This document shows positions 1 to 6,312 of a DNA stretch of 64,000 nt, piece by piece (the first letter of the stretch is position 1; each line of letters begins with the position of its first letter). A model generated the notes under the pieces. The model saw only the letters and a list, made by a program, of their open reading frames with translations. It did not search any database and had not been told where the DNA came from. The stretch spans positions 124,001 through 188,000 of the IMG/VR virus record IMGVR_UViG_3300037054_000148. One strand, given 5' to 3'. A program made the translations under genes and the position numbers.

Positions 1-1122
1 GAAATCCAGTACAAACTCGCTTCCTCACTCTTGGCGAATAGCACCAAGTCGTTGACCGCAATGTTGCGTCAGACGGCTATCAATGCTCATTATACCAAGG
101 TCGCTGAGAAGTTCGAACAGGTACACAAAGTCGAACTCAATGAATTCCTTGAAGATGAGTCCTTCCTCAAGAAGATGAAGGGTGAAGTCGAGAAGGAATT
201 GAAGAGTGAGCCTAAGTCAGCCAAGTTGAAGAAGGCTGATGAAACTGAAGAGCCCAAGGATGAGGCTCCGAAGGATGAGGCTCCGAAGGATGAGGGAGTG
301 CCCCCAATGGACGAAATGCCCCCAGAGGGTGATGTTCCCCCAGTTGACGAGGCTATGCCCCCAGTTGACGAGACGACTCCTCCAATGGATGAGACGACGC
401 CCCCTGAAGGTGGTGCCCCTGCGGGTGAGCCTATTCCTGACGAAAAGAAGCAGGAACTCCAAGAAAAGATCGATAATCTTGAAGCTGATGTTACTTCCCT
501 TGAGGAAGCGATTGAAGGCGAAGAGGAACTCGATTTCACCAAGATCTTCAATGAAGACGACATGGGCGACAAGACCGATGCGTTGGCGAATGAGGGTGAG
601 GGCGAAGAGTTCGGTGAAGATGGTCTTCCAGTCGAAGCTGATGGTGGTGCAGGATTCTTCGGATCCGAGCCCAATGAGCTTGAAGAGGGTGGAGCAACCG
701 CATCCCCAGAGGATTTCTTCCACCATGCATCTCGTTACGACATCTCTTCCCTTGATGTGTTGCTTGCCGATCAGAAGGTAGCCGCAAAGGTCCAGGGTGT
801 GGATGATCCAATTGTCGAGCGTGGCGATATGGCTGACGACCTTCTGAATGAAGGCGGAGTGCCAGACGCTGAGGAAGATCATGAAGATGTGATTCTTTAT
901 GAGGTTCTGAAGACCCTGGGTGTGGATAAGTATGATCCGGGTGCCAAGCGTGAGGGTGAGCCCAAGCTCGAACCCCCAAAGAAGTCTGTCGCCTCCAAGG
1001 CCCCTGCCAAGCCAGCCTCCAAGGCCGCTTCAATCCGCAGTCTCGGCAATGTCAAGACCGCCACGGATATGAGTAAAGAACAGGCAATGCTTGCCAATCT
1101 TGTCTTCACGGACGACATCTAA
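1..1122 (+). CDS. Probable capsid scaffolding/head assembly protein (5' truncated)
   Basis: Frame is open from base 1. The product is very acidic, low-complexity and Pro/Glu-rich (EAPKD repeats, PPxDE repeats) with several K-x-A motifs. It lies two genes upstream of the major capsid protein. Function is inferred from composition and position. Confidence 0.55.
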   Translation, partial: EIQYKLASSLLANSTKSLTAMLRQTAINAHYTKVAEKFEQVHKVELNEFLEDESFLKKMKGEVEKELKSEPKSAKLKKADETEEPKDEAPKDEAPKDEGVPPMDEMPPEGDVPPVDEAMPPVDETTPPMDETTPPEGGAPAGEPIPDEKKQELQEKIDNLEADVTSLEEAIEGEEELDFTKIFNEDDMGDKTDALANEGEGEEFGEDGLPVEADGGAGFFGSEPNELEEGGATASPEDFFHHASRYDISSLDVLLADQKVAAKVQGVDDPIVERGDMADDLLNEGGVPDAEEDHEDVILYEVLKTLGVDKYDPGAKREGEPKLEPPKKSVASKAPAKPASKAASIRSLGNVKTATDMSKEQAMLANLVFTDDI

Positions 1123-1148
1123 ACAGTAGGCAAATAGCTCTCTGAACT

Positions 1149-1180
1149 ATCAGCCCCTCTTACGAGGGGCTGATTTTTAT
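1149..1180 (+). terminator. Rho-independent terminator
   Basis: ATCAGCCCCTC-TTAC-GAGGGGCTGAT, a perfect 11-bp stem followed by a T-tract. Confidence 0.85.
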
Positions 1181-1631
1181 GTGGACGAATGAAAGCGAAA
1201 CTTGGGAGTTGATTTATATTCTTAAAGAAAAGAAGATGATGACTTCCAGGATTTGGAATTCGCTTAAACAGCGAACCTCTACGGCCAAGTTTTACTACTT
1301 CACCAGTCGTAATGGTTTTCAATTCTTTCAAAATAGAGTTTATACGGCTCAATATGTTAGAAATTGGATGTGGGTCTACGAACAGTTTAAGAACAAACTT
1401 TCTAACCCTAACGCCAATTACATGAATGTAAAATATCAGGTTAGTGTGGAAGACGTAGAGCACCCAGAAGGCTGTAAATGGGCCGAAGTAACTGGCCTAA
1501 ACCTGGATGATATGGACTCCCTCTCCAGTCAGTGCGACACCTTCGCCTATCAGAGTGATGCGGAGCCGAAGGTGCTCAGGGAGTTCCCGTTGACCACATT
1601 TACTCAAAATAAGGCGGAATTGCTGTATTAA
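1179..1631 (+). CDS. Hypothetical protein (start uncertain, may be ~1237)
   Basis: 150-aa ORF filling the gap between the terminator and the convergent endonuclease; no recognisable motif. Confidence 0.5.
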   Translation: MWTNESETWELIYILKEKKMMTSRIWNSLKQRTSTAKFYYFTSRNGFQFFQNRVYTAQYVRNWMWVYEQFKNKLSNPNANYMNVKYQVSVEDVEHPEGCKWAEVTGLNLDDMDSLSSQCDTFAYQSDAEPKVLREFPLTTFTQNKAELLY

Positions 1632-1633
1632 CT

Positions 1634-2188
1634 CTATCTAGTTAATGACCAGCCCTCGTTCAAATAGTAATCAATCTGCTGATTTCTCACTCGCTTATAC
1701 TTCTGTCCCTTATACATTTTTATTGTATTAGCAAACATTTCTTTCATTGATTGTCTCCACTCCTCATTGTTGGCCACATTATTATTCCCGCGCTTCTTTG
1801 CAATGGCTGACATTTTTTGTTTAGTTTCTTTCGAGCGTTTCACTCCAAGCTGAGACCCAGCGGTTACACAGGTATTATATAGTTCCACTCCATCAGATTT
1901 CAGTTTTTCCAACCAATACTGCTCTCTAAGCAGGAGAGCTTCTCGGGTGGGCTCAGTAACCTCTATAACTGACCATTGGAATGCGTTGACTCCATATCTT
2001 TCCCACGCCCGACTTAAATGCTCATTACTGTGGATTTTTTTGTTAAGCTCATTATGGTGCCGCCGCCATCTTCGGTAGAAGTTCAGGGCTGAACCTATAT
2101 AGCAGACTCCGCTCTCCTTATTATCTATGCGATACACCCCCGCCCTCATGTCGTACGGAAAGGGGTAGGTTCCCAATGGTCTCGCCAT
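1634..2188 (-). CDS. GIY-YIG homing endonuclease, free-standing, with NUMOD3-like segment
   Basis: GVYRIDN..CYIGSA.NFYRRWRRH, conserved E (LLLREQYWL) and YN; downstream KRSKETKQKMS motif; GAGGAG RBS upstream on the minus strand. Confidence 0.93.
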   Translation of the reverse strand: MARPLGTYPFPYDMRAGVYRIDNKESGVCYIGSALNFYRRWRRHHNELNKKIHSNEHLSRAWERYGVNAFQWSVIEVTEPTREALLLREQYWLEKLKSDGVELYNTCVTAGSQLGVKRSKETKQKMSAIAKKRGNNNVANNEEWRQSMKEMFANTIKMYKGQKYKRVRNQQIDYYLNEGWSLTR

Positions 2189-2354
2189 TATTTTTTCTCC
2201 TCATTAATAGAACGCGAATATCATGTGATAAAAGTAACCTTGTTTTATAAATACCCCTTCCTTCTTTGCACAAGCAACTTCACATTGTAGTGATCTCGCC
2301 ACCTCGGCTGATCCGTGAAGAAGCGATAAAAATCAACTCATATAGGAGAGATTA

Positions 2355-3166
2355 ATGTATCTCGAACTTAGTGACTTGGGTCTTCACAGTGGAAACGTTG
2401 TGAATGTAAGGTTTAAACTTGGAGAACGCTTAACAGATAATGCTGATGCCAATTCCAAACGAAGCCGGTCAATTGGTGCAGGATCGGAACGCTTAGAGGC
2501 CATAATAACCCACCTAAATTGAAAGCTAAGCTTTTAATATGGTGAAGGAATGGTCCAGACCACGAACACCCATTTGGGGTGGCGGTGAAAACCGAAGTGG
2601 TAGAGAAAAAAGCAAATATGGGGTTAAAACCATAAAAAGCTTAGAATAGTGAGTACTACGGTCAGAATGACGGAACTTGCGTCCCCAATCTGACTCTCAC
2701 AGGTGATCCTGGGACTGATAATGCTGCATTGACTGCTGCTGGCTACAATTCTGGAGCCATCGTTAGCATTCTTTACAATGGGACAACCACCCCTGGCGTT
2801 CTCAACCTGATCATCCACCCTCTGGACGGCGCAAACTCCCTCACCGGAGCCGGTCCAGAAGTGCCCTACGGCTTCCTGCTCTTGGGTGCTGGCCAGTTCT
2901 CGTCTTCCATTACCCCTTCGGGCTCTGGCAAGACCCCTGTGGTCCGCGCATTCCCCAAGTTCAAGGTTCCCGCCGCTCAGGTCACGGGCAGCACCCCTCT
3001 CAACGGGCAGCGTCTCTACACTGCTAACGTTGGTGGTGGCGTTGGTCCTGGTATGTTTACCGCAACCCCTGGTTCGGCTAACACCGCTGGTTCCATCGTC
3101 GTGGGTATCTGCACCCACCCAATCTCCGCCACCGAGCCTTGGCTTGGCGTTGCTTCGTTCTTGTAA
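2355..3166 (+). CDS. Capsid decoration/cement-like protein interrupted by a group I intron: join(2355..2368,2650..3166), 176 aa
   Basis: AGGAGAG RBS precedes ATG 2355. Removing 2369-2649 gives MYLEL-EYYGQNDGTCVPN.., in frame with ORF 2729..3166. The product is small, Gly/Thr-rich and beta-like, and sits directly upstream of the major capsid protein. Confidence 0.75.
2369..2649 (+). ncRNA. Group I self-splicing intron without internal ORF (281 nt)
   Basis: P-like AAACTTGGAGAAC, Q-like AATTCCAAACGAAG, R-like GCTTAGAGGCCAT and S-like AAGGAATGGTCC (P7 GGCCA/TGGTC). P9-type hairpin CGGT-GAAA-ACCG. The IGS GTGACTTGGGT pairs with both exons, with U.G at the 5' splice site. The intron ends in G. Confidence 0.85.
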
Positions 3167-3181
3167 AGGGAGACAAATACA

Positions 3182-4120
3182 ATGACTATTCTATCCCGCA
3201 CCCAAGCACAGACCGCCCAGCTTGGTCAGATTCTGAAGACCGCAGCCGGTCGCCAGAAGCTAGCCGCCGCTCTAGGCCCCTCTCTTCGTCGTCGCCGTGA
3301 CTACATGTCAATCGCCCGTAAGGCATTGATGGTAGAAACACTTCCCGATGGAGCCCTCCCGATTTACGACAAGGAATTTGACGAAACCGGACGCAGCTTC
3401 GTGCAGGCGTTCGTGGTCGGTGAACAGGGTGGAGACGTTGTAAACGTTGCCAACCCAATCCGTGTCACGGTCCCCACGTTTGAAATCGTGTCCAACCCCA
3501 TGATTCCAATCACCCAGATCAAAGAGCGCAGATTCGATATCGTTTCTCGCGCCCTCAATCTGGCTAAGGCCGAAGTCGGTGCCGCTGAGGACAACTACGT
3601 CTTCAACCTCTTCCTGAAGATTGATGCTGCGGCCACTACCGCAACCTCTTCGACCGGATACACTGATTACGTTTACAACAAGAGCCTTGCCTATAACGTC
3701 TCTTCATCTTCCGGACCTTACGGCCTCGCCGTTGATCCTTTCGCAGATGCTTTCGGTATGGTGCAGCGTCACGATCTCTCTGTTGCCTACATCTTCATGA
3801 ACCCTCGTGATTATGTGGACATCCTGAAGTGGACTGATGACAACATCGACCGTGAGACTCAGCGTCACTTGCTGAAAACCGGTATCATGGGCTACCTCTG
3901 GGGCGCAACGATCTTGCAGTCCAGAAAAGTCGCTTACGGTGATGTCTGGGTCATGGCTGATGCCGAGTTCCTTGGTGTCATCCCTGAGCGTGTCCCCCTG
4001 ACCGTTCTAAGTGCTGATCGCCCTGACCTTCGTCAGATTGGCTTCAGTGTTTTCGAGATTCTGGGATTTTTAATTTTCAATCCTTCTGGATTGGAGAGAA
4101 TCGTAATCACCCGGTCTTAA
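3182..4120 (+). CDS. Major capsid protein (HK97 fold)
   Basis: 312 aa with strongly C-ending codons typical of high expression. Sequence fits large-phage MCPs (ETLPDGALPIYDKE; VTVPTFEIVSNPMIPITQIKERRFDIV; YIFMNPRDY; GYLWGATI). Followed by a strong terminator. Confidence 0.85.
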   Translation: MTILSRTQAQTAQLGQILKTAAGRQKLAAALGPSLRRRRDYMSIARKALMVETLPDGALPIYDKEFDETGRSFVQAFVVGEQGGDVVNVANPIRVTVPTFEIVSNPMIPITQIKERRFDIVSRALNLAKAEVGAAEDNYVFNLFLKIDAAATTATSSTGYTDYVYNKSLAYNVSSSSGPYGLAVDPFADAFGMVQRHDLSVAYIFMNPRDYVDILKWTDDNIDRETQRHLLKTGIMGYLWGATILQSRKVAYGDVWVMADAEFLGVIPERVPLTVLSADRPDLRQIGFSVFEILGFLIFNPSGLERIVITRS

Positions 4121-4142
4121 AAAGTCCTTGATAATTAAGGCA

Positions 4143-4172
4143 AAGGGCCTCTTCGGAGGCCCTTGTTATTTC
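4143..4172 (+). terminator. Rho-independent terminator after the major capsid gene
   Basis: AAGGGCCTC-TTCG-GAGGCCCTT, a 9-bp stem with UUCG loop and a T-rich tail. Confidence 0.9.
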
Positions 4173-4292
4173 TTACAAAAATTAGTAAAAAATCGGCACC
4201 GGCCTCCACTCAATCTCAATTACTCTTAACCCAATTCATCCTACGTAAAACTAATCCAACTCAGTAAAATAATCTATCCAATTCCCTAGAAT

Positions 4293-4315
4293 ACCGAGTA
4301 TTATATTGTAGGAGG
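4293..4315 (+). promoter_or_regulatory. Putative promoter -10 plus RBS motif, copy 1
   Basis: ACCGAGTATTATATTGTAGGAGG is 21/23 identical to 63277-63299. It contains TATTAT and AGGAGG just upstream of ATG 4320. Confidence 0.55.
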
Positions 4316-4319
4316 TCCC

Positions 4320-5570
4320 ATGGACCAGACAATCAAAGATGCTTTTGCGGAAATACCCCATGATCCAGATTGGTTGGATCGCTACTTGAATTTTCTTGAG
4401 GAATCCACTATTCCGACTGAGGATGACTACTCCGAGTCTCATCATATTCTTCCCAGGAGTCTGTTTCCTGACTTTCAGTTGTTTACTCAGAACCCTTGGA
4501 ATCGCATTGACTTGAAGGGGACGGACCATCTGATCGCTCACTACTTCCTACTGAAAGCTTTACCAGAGGTTCATGCACTCAGACATGCGTTCTGCTTCAT
4601 GGTGGGCATTAGGCAGGATCAGCCGGTTCCTGATATCTCTCCCATCCTTCTTCAAGAGATGGCTGAAGAGTATGTGTTTCAGAAAACTGGGCTCAGATGG
4701 GTAACTAAAGATGGTCAGGAGCTGAAGATTTTGCCTCATGAACACACGAAGTATTTAATGGACGGGTGGGCTCTGGGTAGGGCTTATACCCATTCTAATG
4801 AAACTCGGCTAAAAATTATTGATGGAAATAGGGAGTGGCACCGACTTGAATCTCTCAAGTCTGACGCTTATGTATATCTGCCCCACGGTGATCAACATCA
4901 TCGTCGTATATTTGGCTGCCCCCCAGAAGTTAGGGCAAAAATTTCTGCTGGGCTGACCGGATTGGTTCAGTCTGCTGAAACGATTGAAAAGCGGCGGCTG
5001 AAAATAGTTGGGACACATTGGGTCTGGAACCCAGACTCCAAGAAACAGTTATCCGTTTCTCGCCAGGGTGAGGGCAACAACCGCTTTGGCCAAGTTGGTT
5101 ATTGGCGAGACAAACATCATTCTGAAGAGGAAAAGCAAAAAACCTCTGAGTCTCTCAAGCAGTTCAACAGGGAACACCCTGATGTGAATCGGGATAACAA
5201 GCCCAGAGGGGAGGATCATTGGACGTTCGGCAGGGAGCGACCAGAGGAGACGAGACAGAAGATATCTGCCTCGCTGACGGGCAAGAAACAGTCCACAGCG
5301 ACCAAACAGAAACGTGCGGAGTCCCTAGCGATGACTAAACTTCCCTCTTTTACTCCAGAAGAGGAAAGTATTTTTCATCGCATCCTCTCTGCCCCGACTG
5401 ACAGAGAGCGAGAGTGTCTGGCTAGGTTGATTAGTTCCACCAAGCAAGCACCGGCCAAATCCTTAGCTCTGGGTCTCTGCTTCCTTCTCAACGGAGAGTG
5501 GCAGACTCGTGACCGCCGCTACTGGAGGACGGCTGAAACTTGGCTGAAGAAAAATAACATCGTTATTTGA
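4320..5570 (+). CDS. HNH homing endonuclease with NUMOD3-type DNA-binding repeats
   Basis: ESHHILPRS..NRIDL..DHLIAHYFL HNH core; repeated modules such as HSNETRLKI, PEVRAKISAGLTG, HSEEEKQKTSESLK and PEETRQKISASLTG. Confidence 0.88.
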   Translation: MDQTIKDAFAEIPHDPDWLDRYLNFLEESTIPTEDDYSESHHILPRSLFPDFQLFTQNPWNRIDLKGTDHLIAHYFLLKALPEVHALRHAFCFMVGIRQDQPVPDISPILLQEMAEEYVFQKTGLRWVTKDGQELKILPHEHTKYLMDGWALGRAYTHSNETRLKIIDGNREWHRLESLKSDAYVYLPHGDQHHRRIFGCPPEVRAKISAGLTGLVQSAETIEKRRLKIVGTHWVWNPDSKKQLSVSRQGEGNNRFGQVGYWRDKHHSEEEKQKTSESLKQFNREHPDVNRDNKPRGEDHWTFGRERPEETRQKISASLTGKKQSTATKQKRAESLAMTKLPSFTPEEESIFHRILSAPTDRERECLARLISSTKQAPAKSLALGLCFLLNGEWQTRDRRYWRTAETWLKKNNIVI

Positions 5571-5628
5571 CAACAAACAGAGTAATAGTTCAATATCCCC
5601 TACGGGGGAACTCTTCCATGGAGAACAA

Positions 5629-6312
5629 ATGAACAAATGCTATAAATTCACCCGAGACGTTAACTTCCCTCAGAAGGGACCGGACGGGAAAACTCCCAAC
5701 GGTTTCGTCGCTTTGCCTGGGGACACGATTACCCAGATTTCTCACACCACCTATCAGTTTTCAGATGGATATAAGGAACGTGAACTCACATTAACCGACC
5801 AGGGTATTGAGACTATGCTGGGTCATGGCTGGATTGAAGAAATTGGTGTTGAGGGTGAGGAGGGAGAGGAACAAGAGGTCTCCACAGATCCCTATGAGAT
5901 CATCGCTGCGGCTCAGGCACAGATTGCTGCGGCTCAGGCTGCCATCAATCAGGCGACTGCCAGCAAGGCTATCTCTAAGGCAGCGGCTCTGCGTCCTGCA
6001 AATCGCCCTAATACCCCCACAGCTAAGCCTGTCCCCACTCCCCAGGCCCCTCGTCCTGTCCCTCCTCCGGCAAGGCCAGTAGTTCCAGCCCCCTCTCCTA
6101 AGCCAGCCCCCAAGCCCCTTCCTAAGCCCATTGGAAAGGTCGTGGCTCCCGCCGCCCCCGAGCGGGTATCCCCCATTCTTGAGTCCGCTCTGGGAGAAGA
6201 CCCCACGCAGGGTCATGGTCAGCTTTCAGAAGCTGAGGCAGTTGATGCCGTTCTATCCAGAGTCAAGAGGGTGAACCGCCCCCGTACCCCAGCAGGAACG
6301 GCAAAGGGTTAA
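5629..6312 (+). CDS. Hypothetical protein with Ala/Pro-rich linker
   Basis: 227-aa ORF with GGAG RBS and a long PxP tract. Confidence 0.7.
   Translation: MNKCYKFTRDVNFPQKGPDGKTPNGFVALPGDTITQISHTTYQFSDGYKERELTLTDQGIETMLGHGWIEEIGVEGEEGEEQEVSTDPYEIIAAAQAQIAAAQAAINQATASKAISKAAALRPANRPNTPTAKPVPTPQAPRPVPPPARPVVPAPSPKPAPKPLPKPIGKVVAPAAPERVSPILESALGEDPTQGHGQLSEAEAVDAVLSRVKRVNRPRTPAGTAKG

What the first reader, a model, noticed from the sequence alone, without database searches (positions are those of the whole stretch)
2355..3166. Hidden group I intron 14 nt into the gene upstream of the major capsid protein
Seen: a strong SD and ATG at 2355, then 281 nt with P/Q/R/S-like core elements, a P7 helix (GGCCA/TGGTC) and a GNRA-capped P9. 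The internal guide GTGACTTGGGT pairs with the spliced junction ACT/TGAGTAC, and the intron ends in G. Splicing restores MYLELEYYGQNDG.. (176 aa). The ORF track misses this and starts the gene at TTG 2729. An ORF-less intron in an abundant head-decoration gene, with a 5' exon of under five codons, is an unusual host site and could make capsid stoichiometry depend on splicing.
Basis: partly seen in the sequence, partly recalled or inferred. Interest (0 to 1): 0.72.

Follow-up and report, generated by a model that had tools for sequence, protein, structure and literature searches.

The report
Hidden self-splicing intron in phage head gene
A 281-base self-splicing group I intron, missed by gene callers and by the standard RNA-family model, interrupts a giant peat-soil phage's probable head-decoration gene just 14 bases after its start codon, and it travels with a neighbouring homing-endonuclease gene.

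Summary
[quoted passage not shown] It splits a 176-aa gene into a 14-nt first exon (2355-2368) and a second exon (2650-3166).

- Intron-less homologues in related phage contigs start exactly MYLELEYYGQNDG.
- Four diverged intron variants occupy the same site. Across them, 98.5% of cells in the proposed P1-P9 helices pair, and 20 of 66 pairs show compensatory changes, including the P3/P7 pseudoknot.
- All four variants end in G and keep a U.G wobble at the 5' splice site. Their guide sequence co-varies with synonymous changes in exon 2.
- Peat and permafrost metatranscriptome contigs carry exon 1 joined to exon 2 at the predicted junction, for a sister allele. Intron depth is about a tenth of exon depth.
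- Rfam RF00028 gives no hit. The core is nevertheless homologous to bacterial tRNA anticodon-loop introns (IC3-like), with an extra 44-nt 3' hairpin.
- An intact antisense GIY-YIG homing endonuclease lies upstream in every intron-bearing genome. Endonuclease and intron form one divergent cassette, which suggests collaborative homing.

This is a new member of a known kind. The idea that splicing sets capsid stoichiometry is untested.

The parts
2345..2350 (+). Shine-Dalgarno sequence (GGAGAG) of the split gene
   Evidence: Read directly. A matching purine-rich box sits at the same distance before the ATG in all intron-bearing and intron-less loci.
2355..2368 (+). Exon 1: ATG plus 11 nt (M Y L E and the first two bases of L). 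It ends in U2368, the 5' splice site.
   Evidence: The identical 14-mer lies 275-281 nt upstream of exon 2 in all 11 intron-bearing IMG/VR loci. Intron-less homologues start MYLELEYYGQ. RNA contigs join it to exon 2.
2369..2649 (+). ORF-less group I intron, 281 nt, IC3-like, with terminal omega-G at 2649
   Evidence: Covariation over four variants. Homology to bacterial tRNA introns. Low RNA depth relative to the exons.
2366..2381 (+). P1 hairpin: exon A2366 C2367 U2368 pair with U2381 G2380 G2379, with a U.G wobble at the splice site. The internal guide sequence is 2371-2381.
   Evidence: The pairs are invariant in all variants.
2382..2406 (+). P2 hairpin with a GAAA tetraloop (2392-2395)
   Evidence: 5 of 10 pairs show compensatory changes. 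The loop is invariant.
2410..2413 (+). P3 5' strand (GGUU). It pairs with 2507-2510 (AACC) and forms the pseudoknot with P7.
   Evidence: Variant D has GACG/CGUC, so 3 of 4 pairs are compensatory.
2419..2458 (+). P4-P5 domain (P4 2419-2424 with 2453-2458; P5 inside), preceded by an AAA J3/4
   Evidence: Compensatory pairs in P4 (2) and P5 (1). It aligns with P4 of the tRNA introns.
2459..2494 (+). P6 hairpin
   Evidence: 3 compensatory pairs.
2498..2555 (+). P7 (2498-2503 with 2550-2555) enclosing P3' (2507-2510), P8 (2511-2544, with a tetraloop-receptor-like CCUAAA/UAUGG) and J8/7 (2545-2549)
   Evidence: P7 is GGCCA/UGGUC in variants A and D and GACUA/UAGUC in B and C. The R-like AGAGACUA and S-like AAGGCAUAGUCC motifs are shared with tRNA introns.
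2559..2605 (+). P9 three-way junction (P9 2559-2563 with 2597-2601; P9a 2567-2581; P9b 2583-2594 with a GAAA loop), followed by AGAG
   Evidence: Compensatory pairs in P9a and P9b. The sequence matches tRNA introns L042 and L044, which appear (read by eye from the 3'-exon sequence; ARAGORN called no tRNA) to end at this GAG.
2606..2649 (+). Phage-specific 3' extension: a two-tier hairpin (2610-2613 with 2639-2642; 2617-2621 with 2630-2634) and a 7-nt tail to omega-G
   Evidence: Each of the four variants folds to the same shape despite a different sequence. Profile matches to the tRNA introns stop at profile positions 186-244, short of this extension.
2650..3166 (+). Exon 2 of the 176-aa putative head-decoration protein. 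The first 5 nt form P10 with 2374-2378.
   Evidence: EYYGQNDG..LTGDPG, encoded at 2651-2728, is the most conserved part of the protein yet lies upstream of the called TTG start. Fold matches go to capsid decoration proteins.
1634..2188 (-). Free-standing GIY-YIG homing endonuclease gene (184 aa), transcribed away from the split gene
   Evidence: PF01541 at E = 1.5e-13 and phrog_314 at E = 3.5e-23. It is present and intact next to all four intron variants.
1151..2650 (.). Divergent cassette: ORF150, the GIY-YIG gene, the 5' UTR, exon 1 and the intron
   Evidence: In the comparison of variant A with variant B, the flanks are 92-100% identical and this block only 50-80%. The 3' border falls at the intron/exon-2 junction.
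3182..4120 (+). Major capsid protein gene, co-transcribed downstream, with a terminator at 4143-4164
   Evidence: phrog_2522 at E = 3.6e-41. Terminator scan. RNA depth runs from about 2256 to about 4139.

Best explanation
Window 2369-2649 is a self-splicing, ORF-less group I intron of the compact IC3-like type, the lineage otherwise found in bacterial tRNA anticodon loops. It interrupts the gene just upstream of the major capsid gene, 14 nt after the start codon.

Proposed splicing steps:
1. The late transcript runs from a promoter between 2189 and about 2280 to the terminator at 4143-4164.
2. The guide sequence 2371-2381 pairs with exon 1 and sets the U2368.G2379 wobble at the 5' splice site.
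3. P2's GAAA loop and the receptor-like internal loop in P8, together with the P3/P7 pseudoknot, build the core.
4. Guanosine attacks after U2368.
5. The guide then pairs with the first 5 nt of exon 2 (P10), and the terminal G2649 enters the G-site.
6. The exons are ligated to give a 176-aa protein starting MYLELEYYGQNDG, most likely a head-decoration or cement protein.

The sequence, the structure, the exon junction and the RNA junction (for a sister allele) are shown. The chemistry is inferred from family membership.

The intron is probably kept and spread at the DNA level together with the antisense free-standing GIY-YIG endonuclease 166 nt upstream. In this collaborative (trans) homing model, the enzyme would cut intron-less alleles near the insertion site, and repair would copy the endonuclease gene, the intron and a few exon bases. 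This step is inferred.

The confidence of 0.9 applies to the claim that this is a spliced group I intron. The homing link stands at about 0.55 and the decoration role at about 0.65.
For: Exon junction
- Intron-less homologues start MYLELEYYGQNDG.
- Tunturiibacter phage Tunturi_5 gp333 starts MLKLVNYGQNEG.
- The segment 2651-2728 encodes the best-conserved residues of the family but has no start codon of its own.

Intron structure
- Four variants (281, 277, 276 and 275 nt) sit at the same site. All end in G and follow ...ACU.
- 260 of 264 cells pair, and 20 of 66 pairs are compensatory, including 3 of 4 in P3 and one in P7. Slid controls give 25-40% paired and 1-3 compensatory pairs. Column shuffles give at most 94.7% and at most 15.
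- P10 co-varies with synonymous exon-2 changes: TGAGTAC in variant A, CGAATAT in B and C, TGAATAT in D.

Homology
- 3 of 14 of these pass the RF00028 gathering score, and L044 scores 48.7 bits.
- A profile of the phage introns matches these tRNA introns over positions 9-241, with E down to 5e-21.
- A profile built from bacteria only hits window 2510-2602 at E = 5.6e-12 and finds no other intron core in the genome.

RNA
- In four metatranscriptomes, depth is 3-12 over the intron and 17-190 over exon 2 and the capsid gene. It is 0 over 1000-2255 and 4140-4924.
- Contigs in X3 and X4 read ...GAGTAGAGAATGTATCTCGAACT|CGAATAT and continue into exon 2.

Endonuclease link
- GIY-YIG domain identified.
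- An intact endonuclease gene lies next to 4 of 4 intron variants but only 1 of 9 intron-less types.
- The cassette 1151-2650 is far more diverged than its flanks.
Against: - Rfam RF00028 gives no hit on the window, even at E<=10 on a 371-nt query.
- No RNA contig with the window's own (variant A) ligated junction was seen. X1 holds only an unspliced 2277-2700 contig, at depth 9.8.
- The ligated RNA contig matches none of my DNA loci base for base. An intron-less strain with a B/C-type leader cannot be fully excluded. A scan of IMG/VR for the ligated exon junction itself (ATGTATCTCGAACTYGARTAYTACGG) found it only in the intron-less L023 contig, whose leader differs.
- The four variants are few and related, so the covariation counts are not independent events.
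- The bacterial intron set was retrieved with a motif taken from the phage intron, which makes the E-values optimistic.
- One intron-less lineage (L012 type) also carries a GIY-YIG gene, 35% identical, and no cleavage data exist.
- In variant A the exon-1 frame runs 55 codons into the intron core with no early stop. In coupled transcription-translation this would be expected to hinder folding.
Confidence: 0.9

Rival explanations
1. There is no intron. The gene really starts at TTG 2729, as the ORF caller has it, and 2355-2728 is a leader with a small unrelated ORF (2355-2522, 55 aa).
For: the ORF listing reports these two ORFs. Rfam finds no intron.
Against: - Residues encoded at 2651-2728 (EYYGQNDG...LTGDPGTDN) are invariant or nearly invariant across homologues down to 45% identity. 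In intron-less genomes they are preceded by MYLEL.
- The 55-aa ORF is not conserved. Variants B and C stop after 18 codons (read from alignment A1).
- There is a rich covariation pattern typical of a structured RNA.
Confidence: 0.02
2. The insertion is a dead or non-splicing remnant. The gene is a pseudogene in this phage, and the ligated RNA contigs come from a co-occurring intron-less strain.
For: No variant-A ligated contig was recovered. The ligated contig's SNP pattern matches no DNA locus exactly. Intron-less alleles exist in nature (L023).
Against: - Exon 1, the splice-site nucleotides, the guide pairing and the whole core are maintained by compensatory change across four lineages.
- Exon 2 is 85-100% conserved at the protein level among the loci carrying variants A-C (57% in variant D, L018) and is under evident purifying selection.
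- In the same libraries, intron depth is about 10% of exon depth while neighbouring DNA has zero depth.
- All DNA contigs with the B/C-type leader carry the intron.
Confidence: 0.05
3. The intron is real, but the GIY-YIG endonuclease is an unrelated free-standing homing gene that happens to sit in the same intergenic hotspot. The intron is then immobile or spreads by other means, such as reverse splicing or ordinary recombination.
For: - Free-standing endonuclease genes are common between conserved phage genes. This window has a second one (HNH, 4320-5570) with no intron nearby.
- The L012-type genomes have a GIY-YIG gene without an intron.
- The endonuclease region shows no RNA depth.
Against: - 4 of 4 intron variants, against 1 of 9 intron-less types, have the endonuclease gene. 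No genome has the intron without it.
- The divergent block shared by the endonuclease gene and the intron ends exactly at the intron's 3' edge. A shared co-conversion unit would look like this.
- The arrangement matches published collaborative homing cases (PMC3984707, PMC2790892).
Confidence: 0.35
4. The two coding pieces are joined by the ribosome (translational bypassing, as in T4 gene 60) and not by RNA splicing.
For: The same protein would result. The take-off and landing codons are both Leu: CUU spans 2367-2369, and the ligated codon is CU|U.
Against: - A 281-nt gap is far beyond known bypass distances. This rests on my own knowledge of the 50-nt T4 gene 60 gap.
- The RNA itself is found ligated.
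- The gap has a full group I core with covariation.
Confidence: 0.01

Closest known systems
Bacterial tRNA anticodon-loop group I introns, subgroup IC3 (tRNA-Leu(UAA) of cyanobacteria and plastids, tRNA-fMet, the Azoarcus tRNA-Ile intron; PMC3984707)
   Same: - Compact core with no P5abc or P7.1/7.2 elements.
- Short P1 with only three exon pairs.
- GAAA-capped P2 and a receptor-like CCUAAA/UAUGG internal loop in P8.
- GAAA-capped P9 arm.
- Near-identical R (GUAGAGACUA) and S (GAAGGCAUAGUCCAG) elements.
- Profile matches over most of the intron.
   Different: - It sits in a phage protein-coding gene, not in a tRNA.
- It carries an extra 44-nt two-tier hairpin after the position where the tRNA introns end, so its omega-G is a new one.
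- P3 is only 4 bp.
- It scores nothing with RF00028.
- The IC3 label rests on homology and secondary structure. The resemblance to the Azoarcus sequence itself is from memory and was not tested.
Collaborative (trans) homing pairs: the cyanophage S-PM2 psbA intron with free-standing F-CphI, and phage Aeh1 nrdA / T4 mobE (PMC3984707, PMC6083498, PMC2790892)
   Same: [quoted passage not shown] Endonuclease and intron are inherited together.
   Different: - The endonuclease family differs: GIY-YIG here, Endo VII-like F-CphI or HNH MobE there.
- The endonuclease gene is antisense and upstream.
- The insertion site is at codon 5, next to the ribosome-binding site.
- Cleavage specificity is unknown here.
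Group I introns in phage virion genes: mycobacteriophage LittleE capsid and BAKA tail genes, lactococcal phage Tuc2009 capsid gene (PMC3706429)
   Same: Efficiently expressed late structural genes interrupted by small introns that follow a U and end in G. The BAKA intron (265 bp) is also ORF-less.
   Different: Those introns lie well inside the coding region. This one leaves a 14-nt first exon, so the splice site lies within the footprint of an initiating ribosome. The lineage (IC3-like) and the host (a jumbo phage from peat, kin of Tunturiibacter phage Tunturi_5) also differ.
Phage head-decoration, cement and head-fibre proteins (lambda gpD, phi29 gp8.5 N-terminal base, T1 and Pam3 capsid decoration chains)
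   Same: The gene sits between the scaffold and the major capsid gene. RNA depth is similar to the capsid gene's. The best fold matches are almost all capsid-surface proteins.
   Different: - There is no sequence-family hit in Pfam or PHROGs.
- Fold matches are weak (E about 0.005-0.06, TM 0.34-0.49) on a model with pLDDT 70.
- The Tunturi_5 homologue is annotated 'tail fiber protein'.

Membership tests
Group I intron | 5' splice site after a U held in a U.G wobble by an internal guide sequence (P1) | tested here: met
   U2368.G2379, flanked by C2367-G2380 and A2366-U2381. Invariant in all four variants.
Group I intron | Terminal guanosine (omega-G) at the 3' splice site, and P10 pairing of the guide with the 3' exon | tested here: met
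   All four variants end in G. P10 is 5 bp in variant A (2650-2654 with 2374-2378). It co-varies with synonymous exon-2 changes in variants B, C and D.
Group I intron | Conserved core: P3-P8 and P4-P6 domains with the P3/P7 pseudoknot, in the canonical order | tested here: met
   98.5% of cells pair and 20 of 66 pairs are compensatory, including P3 (3 of 4) and P7. Controls are far lower.
Group I intron | Conserved R and S sequence elements around P7 (the guanosine-binding helix) | tested here: met
   Variants B and C carry GUAGAGACUA and GAAGGCAUAGUCCAG. The same pair marks at least 120 bacterial genome stretches; of the 80 fetched, ARAGORN as intron-bearing tRNA genes. Variant A has compensated changes (GGCCA/UGGUC).
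Group I intron | Score at or above the Rfam RF00028 gathering threshold | tested here: not met
   No hit at E<=10 on the window, on a 371-nt sub-query or on the whole genome. Homologous tRNA introns reach only 48.7-52 bits against a cut-off of 50, so this failure reflects the model's limited reach.
Group I intron | Exon ligation in RNA | tested here: inconclusive
   Contigs in two metatranscriptomes join exon 1 to exon 2 at the exact predicted site. They belong to a B/C-type allele whose DNA was not recovered. Variant A appears only unspliced, at low depth.
Group I intron | Guanosine-dependent self-splicing in vitro | not testable with these tools
   This needs a bench assay.
IC3 subgroup (tRNA-type group I introns) | Sequence and structure homology to anticodon-loop tRNA introns; compact core without P5abc or P7.1/7.2; an L2 GAAA loop and a receptor in P8 | tested here: met
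   Profile hits over positions 9-241, with E down to 5e-21. The reverse profile gives E = 5.6e-12. Alignment A2. GAAA at 2392-2395 and CCUAAA/UAUGG in P8. Tertiary docking itself was not testable.
IC3 subgroup (tRNA-type group I introns) | Location in a tRNA anticodon loop | tested here: not met
   The intron lies in a protein-coding gene, after nucleotide 14 of the CDS. It therefore works like an IC3 intron, and is homologous to that lineage, but sits in a new kind of host site.
Collaborative (trans) homing system | An ORF-less intron with a free-standing homing endonuclease gene beside it, the two inherited together | tested here: met
   A GIY-YIG gene at 1634-2188 on the minus strand. It is intact beside all four variants, and no genome has the intron without it. 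Shared divergent block 1151-2650.
Collaborative (trans) homing system | The endonuclease cuts the intron-less allele at or near the intron insertion site and spares the intron-bearing allele | not testable with these tools
   There are no cleavage data. A candidate natural target is the L023 allele, whose exon sequence equals the ligated B/C exons.
Phage head-decoration protein | Fold and family membership of a capsid-surface decoration protein | tested here: inconclusive
   No Pfam or PHROG family. The AlphaFold model has pLDDT 70 and pTM 0.70. Top Foldseek matches are phi29 gp8.5, Pam3, T1, FCWL1 and lambda gpD-type chains, but at E 0.05-0.7. BFVD gives E of 0.005 or weaker.

The most novel reading that the evidence does not exclude
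The 5' splice site lies 14 nt from the AUG, inside the footprint of an initiating ribosome. The exon-1 frame runs on into the ribozyme core with no conserved stop. Ribosome loading and P1 formation could therefore be mutually exclusive. Splicing would then be a kinetic gate that sets how much decoration protein is made relative to the co-transcribed capsid protein, or that ties its synthesis to GTP supply late in infection. A tRNA-type (IC3) ribozyme would have been recruited into a phage ORF, with a new 3' domain and a new omega-G, to do this.
Probability: 0.12. Interest if true: 0.75.

Novelty: new member of a known kind. Interest (0 to 1): 0.52.

Why it matters
- Annotation: gene callers truncate this conserved virion gene by 31 codons (the five exon-1 codons plus the 26 exon-2 codons before TTG 2729). 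The standard Rfam model sees nothing in the window, and I saw no intron annotation on the related contigs. Similar tRNA-type introns may be overlooked in other uncultured phages.
- Evolution: the locus links the bacterial tRNA intron lineage to a phage protein-coding gene. It shows what was added on the way: a 44-nt 3' domain and a new terminal G.
- Mobile-element biology: related genomes offer a natural series. Some have neither endonuclease nor intron, some have the endonuclease alone, and some have both. None has the intron alone. Cassette borders are sharp. This suits a test of the collaborative-homing route to mobile introns.
- Mechanism: a 14-nt first exon puts splicing and translation initiation on the same few nucleotides. 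This is a clean system for asking how the two processes coexist.

Tried and rejected
- Rfam was run three ways on the window: gathering thresholds over the whole window, E<=10 on 4.7 kb, and E<=10 on 371 nt. RF00028 was also run on the whole 313.6-kb genome. There was no group I hit. The only nearby match is a weak LOOT RNA hit (RF03000, 22 bits) at 2511-2634. I attribute it to the receptor-like loop and the hairpins, not to family membership.
- ARAGORN found no tRNA in L042 or L044, because those contigs start inside the tRNA.
- The exact P7'-P9 motif has no match in the species-representative genome collection.
- A DNA search and a profile search of the phage's own genome found no second copy of the intron.
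- The 55-aa ORF at 2355-2522 was considered as a real gene and rejected, because it is not conserved in the other variants.
- ORF150 (1179-1631) has no Pfam or PHROG hit, and its Atlas score of 0.83 is below the useful range.
It was rerun without that row.
- I did not build a covariance model. The 289-320-column alignments exceed the tool's calibration limit.
- I did not use the pair-counting tool, which needs a long typed structure string. The counts and controls were scripted instead.
Full report
**1. What is in the sequence**

The window is bases 124001-188000 of a 313,597-bp IMG/VR phage genome. Its nearest cultured relative is the 308-kb Tunturiibacter phage Tunturi_5.

Around the finding, the gene order is:
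- a scaffold-like gene ending at 1122;
- a terminator at 1149-1174;
- ORF150 (1179-1631, + strand);
- a GIY-YIG homing-endonuclease gene (1634-2188, - strand);
- a 166-nt spacer;
- GGAGAG (2345-2350) and ATG 2355;
- the called ORF TTG 2729-3166;
- the major capsid gene (3182-4120);
- a terminator at 4143-4164;
- an HNH/NUMOD3 endonuclease gene (4320-5570).

The frame of the 2729 ORF is open back to 2645 but has no ATG, GTG or TTG before 2729. Removing 2369-2649 (281 nt, ending in G) joins ATGTATCTCGAACT to TGAGTAC... in frame. The product is 176 codons starting MYLELEYYGQNDG.

**2. The exon junction is confirmed by relatives**

Tunturi_5 gp333 has no interruption and starts MLKLVNYGQNEG...LTGDPGTDN. 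The conserved residues encoded at window 2657-2728 therefore belong to the protein, although they lie upstream of the called start.

A scan of IMG/VR found 25 related loci.
- Intron-less loci: thirteen have an uninterrupted gene; seven of them (L012/13/25, L015-17, L023) begin exactly MYLELEYYGQNDG and the other six (L019-L022, L024, L026) begin differently or are cut at the contig end.
- Intron-bearing loci: eleven loci, plus the window, have the same 14-nt first exon 275-281 nt upstream of exon 2.

EYYGQNDG is invariant in an 11-sequence alignment that reaches down to 45% identity.

**3. The intervening sequence is a conserved, structured RNA**

The interrupted loci fall into four variants:
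- A: the window and six loci, 281 nt;
- B: L005 and L006, 277 nt;
- C: L010 and L011, 276 nt;
- D: L018, 275 nt.

All follow ...ACU and all end in G. Their alignment has 84% mean column identity. RNAalifold recovers P1, P2, P4, P5, P6, P7, P8 and a three-way P9. I added the P3 pseudoknot by hand: 2410-2413 with 2507-2510, which is GGUU/AACC in variants A-C and GACG/CGUC in D.

Over 66 pairs, 260 of 264 cells form standard pairs. 20 pairs show changes on both sides. Two controls were run:
- sliding the 3' partners by 1-3 columns gives 25-40% paired and 1-3 compensatory pairs;
- shuffling within columns gives at most 94.7% paired and at most 15 compensatory pairs in 1000 trials.

P7 is GGCCA/UGGUC in variants A and D and GACUA/UAGUC in B and C.

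The guide sequence behaves as expected. The exon bases A-C-U pair with U-G-G, with the U.G wobble at the splice site. The bases just 5' of that pair with the start of exon 2. The synonymous exon-2 differences (TGAGTAC, CGAATAT, TGAATAT) are matched by changes in the guide.

The last 44 nt (2606-2649) differ greatly in sequence between variants. Each variant still folds into the same two-tier hairpin with a 6-7-nt tail to the terminal G.

**4. Which kind of intron it is**

Rfam RF00028 finds nothing. A motif scan of metagenome contigs with the P7'-P9 sequence found two things:
- the same phage locus again, in five contigs;
- two related introns (L042, L044) that lie in what appear to be tRNA(CAU) anticodon loops; I read this from the 3'-exon sequence, and ARAGORN called no tRNA there because the contigs start inside the gene. 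They appear to end at the GAG that in the phage precedes the 44-nt extension.

L044 scores 48.7 bits with RF00028, at E = 2e-11. It aligns with the phage introns through J3/4-P4, P4', the R element, P8, the S element and P9.

ARAGORN of the 80 fetched loci as intron-bearing tRNA genes, and 33 of those are tRNA-Leu(UAA). Three of 14 tested pass the RF00028 gathering score, at 52 bits.

Two profile searches link the phage intron to this lineage.
- A profile of the four phage introns matches the bacterial introns over positions 9-241, with E down to 5e-21. These E-values are optimistic because the database was pre-selected.
- A profile built only from the bacterial segments finds window 2510-2602 at E = 5.6e-12. 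This is its only intron-core hit in the 313.6-kb genome. Its other hits are T-arm matches to tRNA clusters.

The intron is therefore a member of the compact tRNA-type lineage, classed as IC3 in the literature (PMC3984707). It has GAAA-capped P2 and P9b, and a CCUAAA/UAUGG receptor-like loop in P8. The weak LOOT hit probably reflects that loop.

**5. RNA evidence**

Twenty peat and permafrost metatranscriptomes hold this stretch. I laid the contigs of four of them on 1000-5700.
- Depth: 0 over 1000-2255 and over 4140-4924; 3-12 over the intron; 17-190 over exon 2 and the capsid gene. The signal is therefore RNA, not phage DNA. The transcript spans roughly 2256-4139, in line with the terminator at 4143-4164.
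- Ligated junction: in X3 and X4, a contig that lies on exon 2 from 2657 carries 92-96 further letters ending ...GAGTAGAGAATGTATCTCGAACTCGAATAT. This is the B/C-type leader and exon 1, ligated to B/C-type exon 2 at the predicted junction.
- Unspliced form: X1 holds an unspliced variant-A contig (2277-2700) at depth 9.8.

Two caveats apply. The ligated contig's SNPs match none of my DNA loci exactly, and no ligated variant-A contig was listed. Against an intron-less source, every DNA contig with the B/C leader has the intron. A scan of IMG/VR for the ligated exon junction itself found it only in the L023 contig, which has a different leader.

**6. The endonuclease next door**

The minus-strand ORF 1634-2188 is a GIY-YIG homing endonuclease (PF01541 at 1.5e-13; phrog_314 at 3.5e-23). 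An intact homologue of 184-220 aa, 41-100% identical, lies in the same place and orientation beside all four intron variants.

Among nine intron-less sequence types, only the L012 type has one, at 35% identity. No genome has the intron without the endonuclease gene.

Between variants A and B, the scaffold gene, exon 2 and the capsid gene are 92-100% identical at the DNA level. The block 1151-2650 is only 50-80% identical. Its 3' border falls at the intron/exon-2 junction, and the first seven exon bases are also exchanged.

A cassette that moves as a unit with a short co-conversion tract would leave this pattern. It matches the published collaborative, or trans, homing arrangement of a free-standing endonuclease and an ORF-less intron converging on one site (PMC3984707, PMC6083498, PMC2790892). 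Cleavage specificity is untested, so I give this part about 0.55.

**7. The host gene**

The gene has no Pfam or PHROG family. An AlphaFold model of exon 2 has pLDDT 70 and pTM 0.70. Its Foldseek matches are weak but consistent:
- phi29 head-fibre base gp8.5;
- decoration or cement chains of the Pam3, T1, FCWL1, XM1 and YSD1 capsids;
- lambda gpD;
- DUF2190-type proteins.

These come, with E 0.005-0.7 and TM 0.34-0.49. The gene also sits between the scaffold and capsid genes, and its RNA depth resembles the capsid gene's. On that basis a head-decoration or cement protein is the best reading, at about 0.65. The Tunturi_5 label 'tail fiber protein' is probably inherited from this shared fold.

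**8. How it most likely works, and what is not known**

Shown:
- the split gene;
- the structured RNA, with all the sequence-level hallmarks of a group I intron;
- homology to tRNA introns;
- a ligated RNA in nature;
- linkage to the endonuclease gene.

Inferred:
- guanosine-initiated self-splicing;
- docking of L2 on the P8 receptor;
- homing driven by the GIY-YIG enzyme.

Open: the splice site lies within reach of an initiating ribosome. The exon-1 frame runs 55 codons into the core in variant A, 18 codons in variants B and C, and further in D, so there is no conserved early stop. Reviews regard translation into the core as harmful to folding (PMC3984707).

**9. Novelty**

Group I introns in phage genes, including capsid and tail genes (PMC3706429), are established, and so are pairs of an ORF-less intron and a free-standing endonuclease. 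This is a new member of that kind.

Its unusual traits are:
- tRNA-type ancestry in a protein-coding gene;
- an added 3' domain;
- a 14-nt first exon;
- invisibility to RF00028.

I found no paper reporting an IC3-type intron in a phage ORF, but that search is not exhaustive.

Noticed in passing
window 4320-5570 (+): A second free-standing homing endonuclease (HNH-like, with a NUMOD3 motif; phrog_655) sits after the capsid-gene terminator. It is present only in variant-A genomes (window, L002-4, L008-9). L005 and L010 go straight from the capsid gene to orf227, so this is a presence/absence polymorphism.
   Followed up: partly
window 1179-1631 (+): ORF150 has unknown function: no Pfam or PHROG hit, and an Atlas score of only 0.83. 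It travels with the GIY-YIG gene in variants A-C (67-100% identical). Variant D (L018) instead has a different 176-aa minus-strand ORF at that place.
   Followed up: partly
window 2290-2320, and the same position in L005, L010, L018 and L023: A conserved motif, GTGATCTCGCC..GGCTGATCC, lies 35-65 nt upstream of the ATG. It is inside the 5' UTR of at least 71 nt seen in the RNA contigs, and it is also kept in intron-less loci. It could be a late-promoter element or a leader element.
   Followed up: no
window 2511-2634: There is a weak match to the LOOT RNA model (RF03000, 22 bits, E = 0.034 on a short query). It covers P8, J8/7, P7' and P9, and the shared part is the CCUAAA...AUGG receptor-like loop and the hairpins. 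LOOT RNAs might share a tetraloop-receptor module with these introns.
   Followed up: no
window 3864-3954 (inside the capsid gene): RNA contigs in X1 and X4 skip 89 nt here, with only 23 letters on the shorter side. Loose ends occur at 3842 and 4006. This is probably divergent co-occurring strains and not a second intron, because 89 is not a multiple of 3.
   Followed up: no
G000 about 12-17 kb, 201-207 kb and 262 kb (outside the window): The bacterial tRNA-intron profile gives many weak T-arm-like hits here. This suggests large tRNA gene clusters in this jumbo phage. None shows an intron core.
   Followed up: no
L012, L013 and L025 (IMG/VR contigs), about 3200-3826 (-): This intron-less lineage still has a GIY-YIG gene (35% identical) upstream of the decoration gene. 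Its first codons differ from the intron-bearing exons at four synonymous positions (CTT GAG TTA). An endonuclease-free relative (L015) shares similar codons, so this is not clearly a resistance signature.
   Followed up: partly
window 1-1122 (+): The scaffold-like protein is highly acidic, with proline-rich near-repeats (PPMDE / PPVDE / PPEGG). It has no Pfam or PHROG family.
   Followed up: no
L049-L109 (bacterial genome loci): RF00028 reaches its gathering score in only 3 of 14 bacterial tRNA-intron loci tested, at 52 bits against a cut-off of 50. Routine Rfam annotation probably misses most introns of this lineage.
   Followed up: partly
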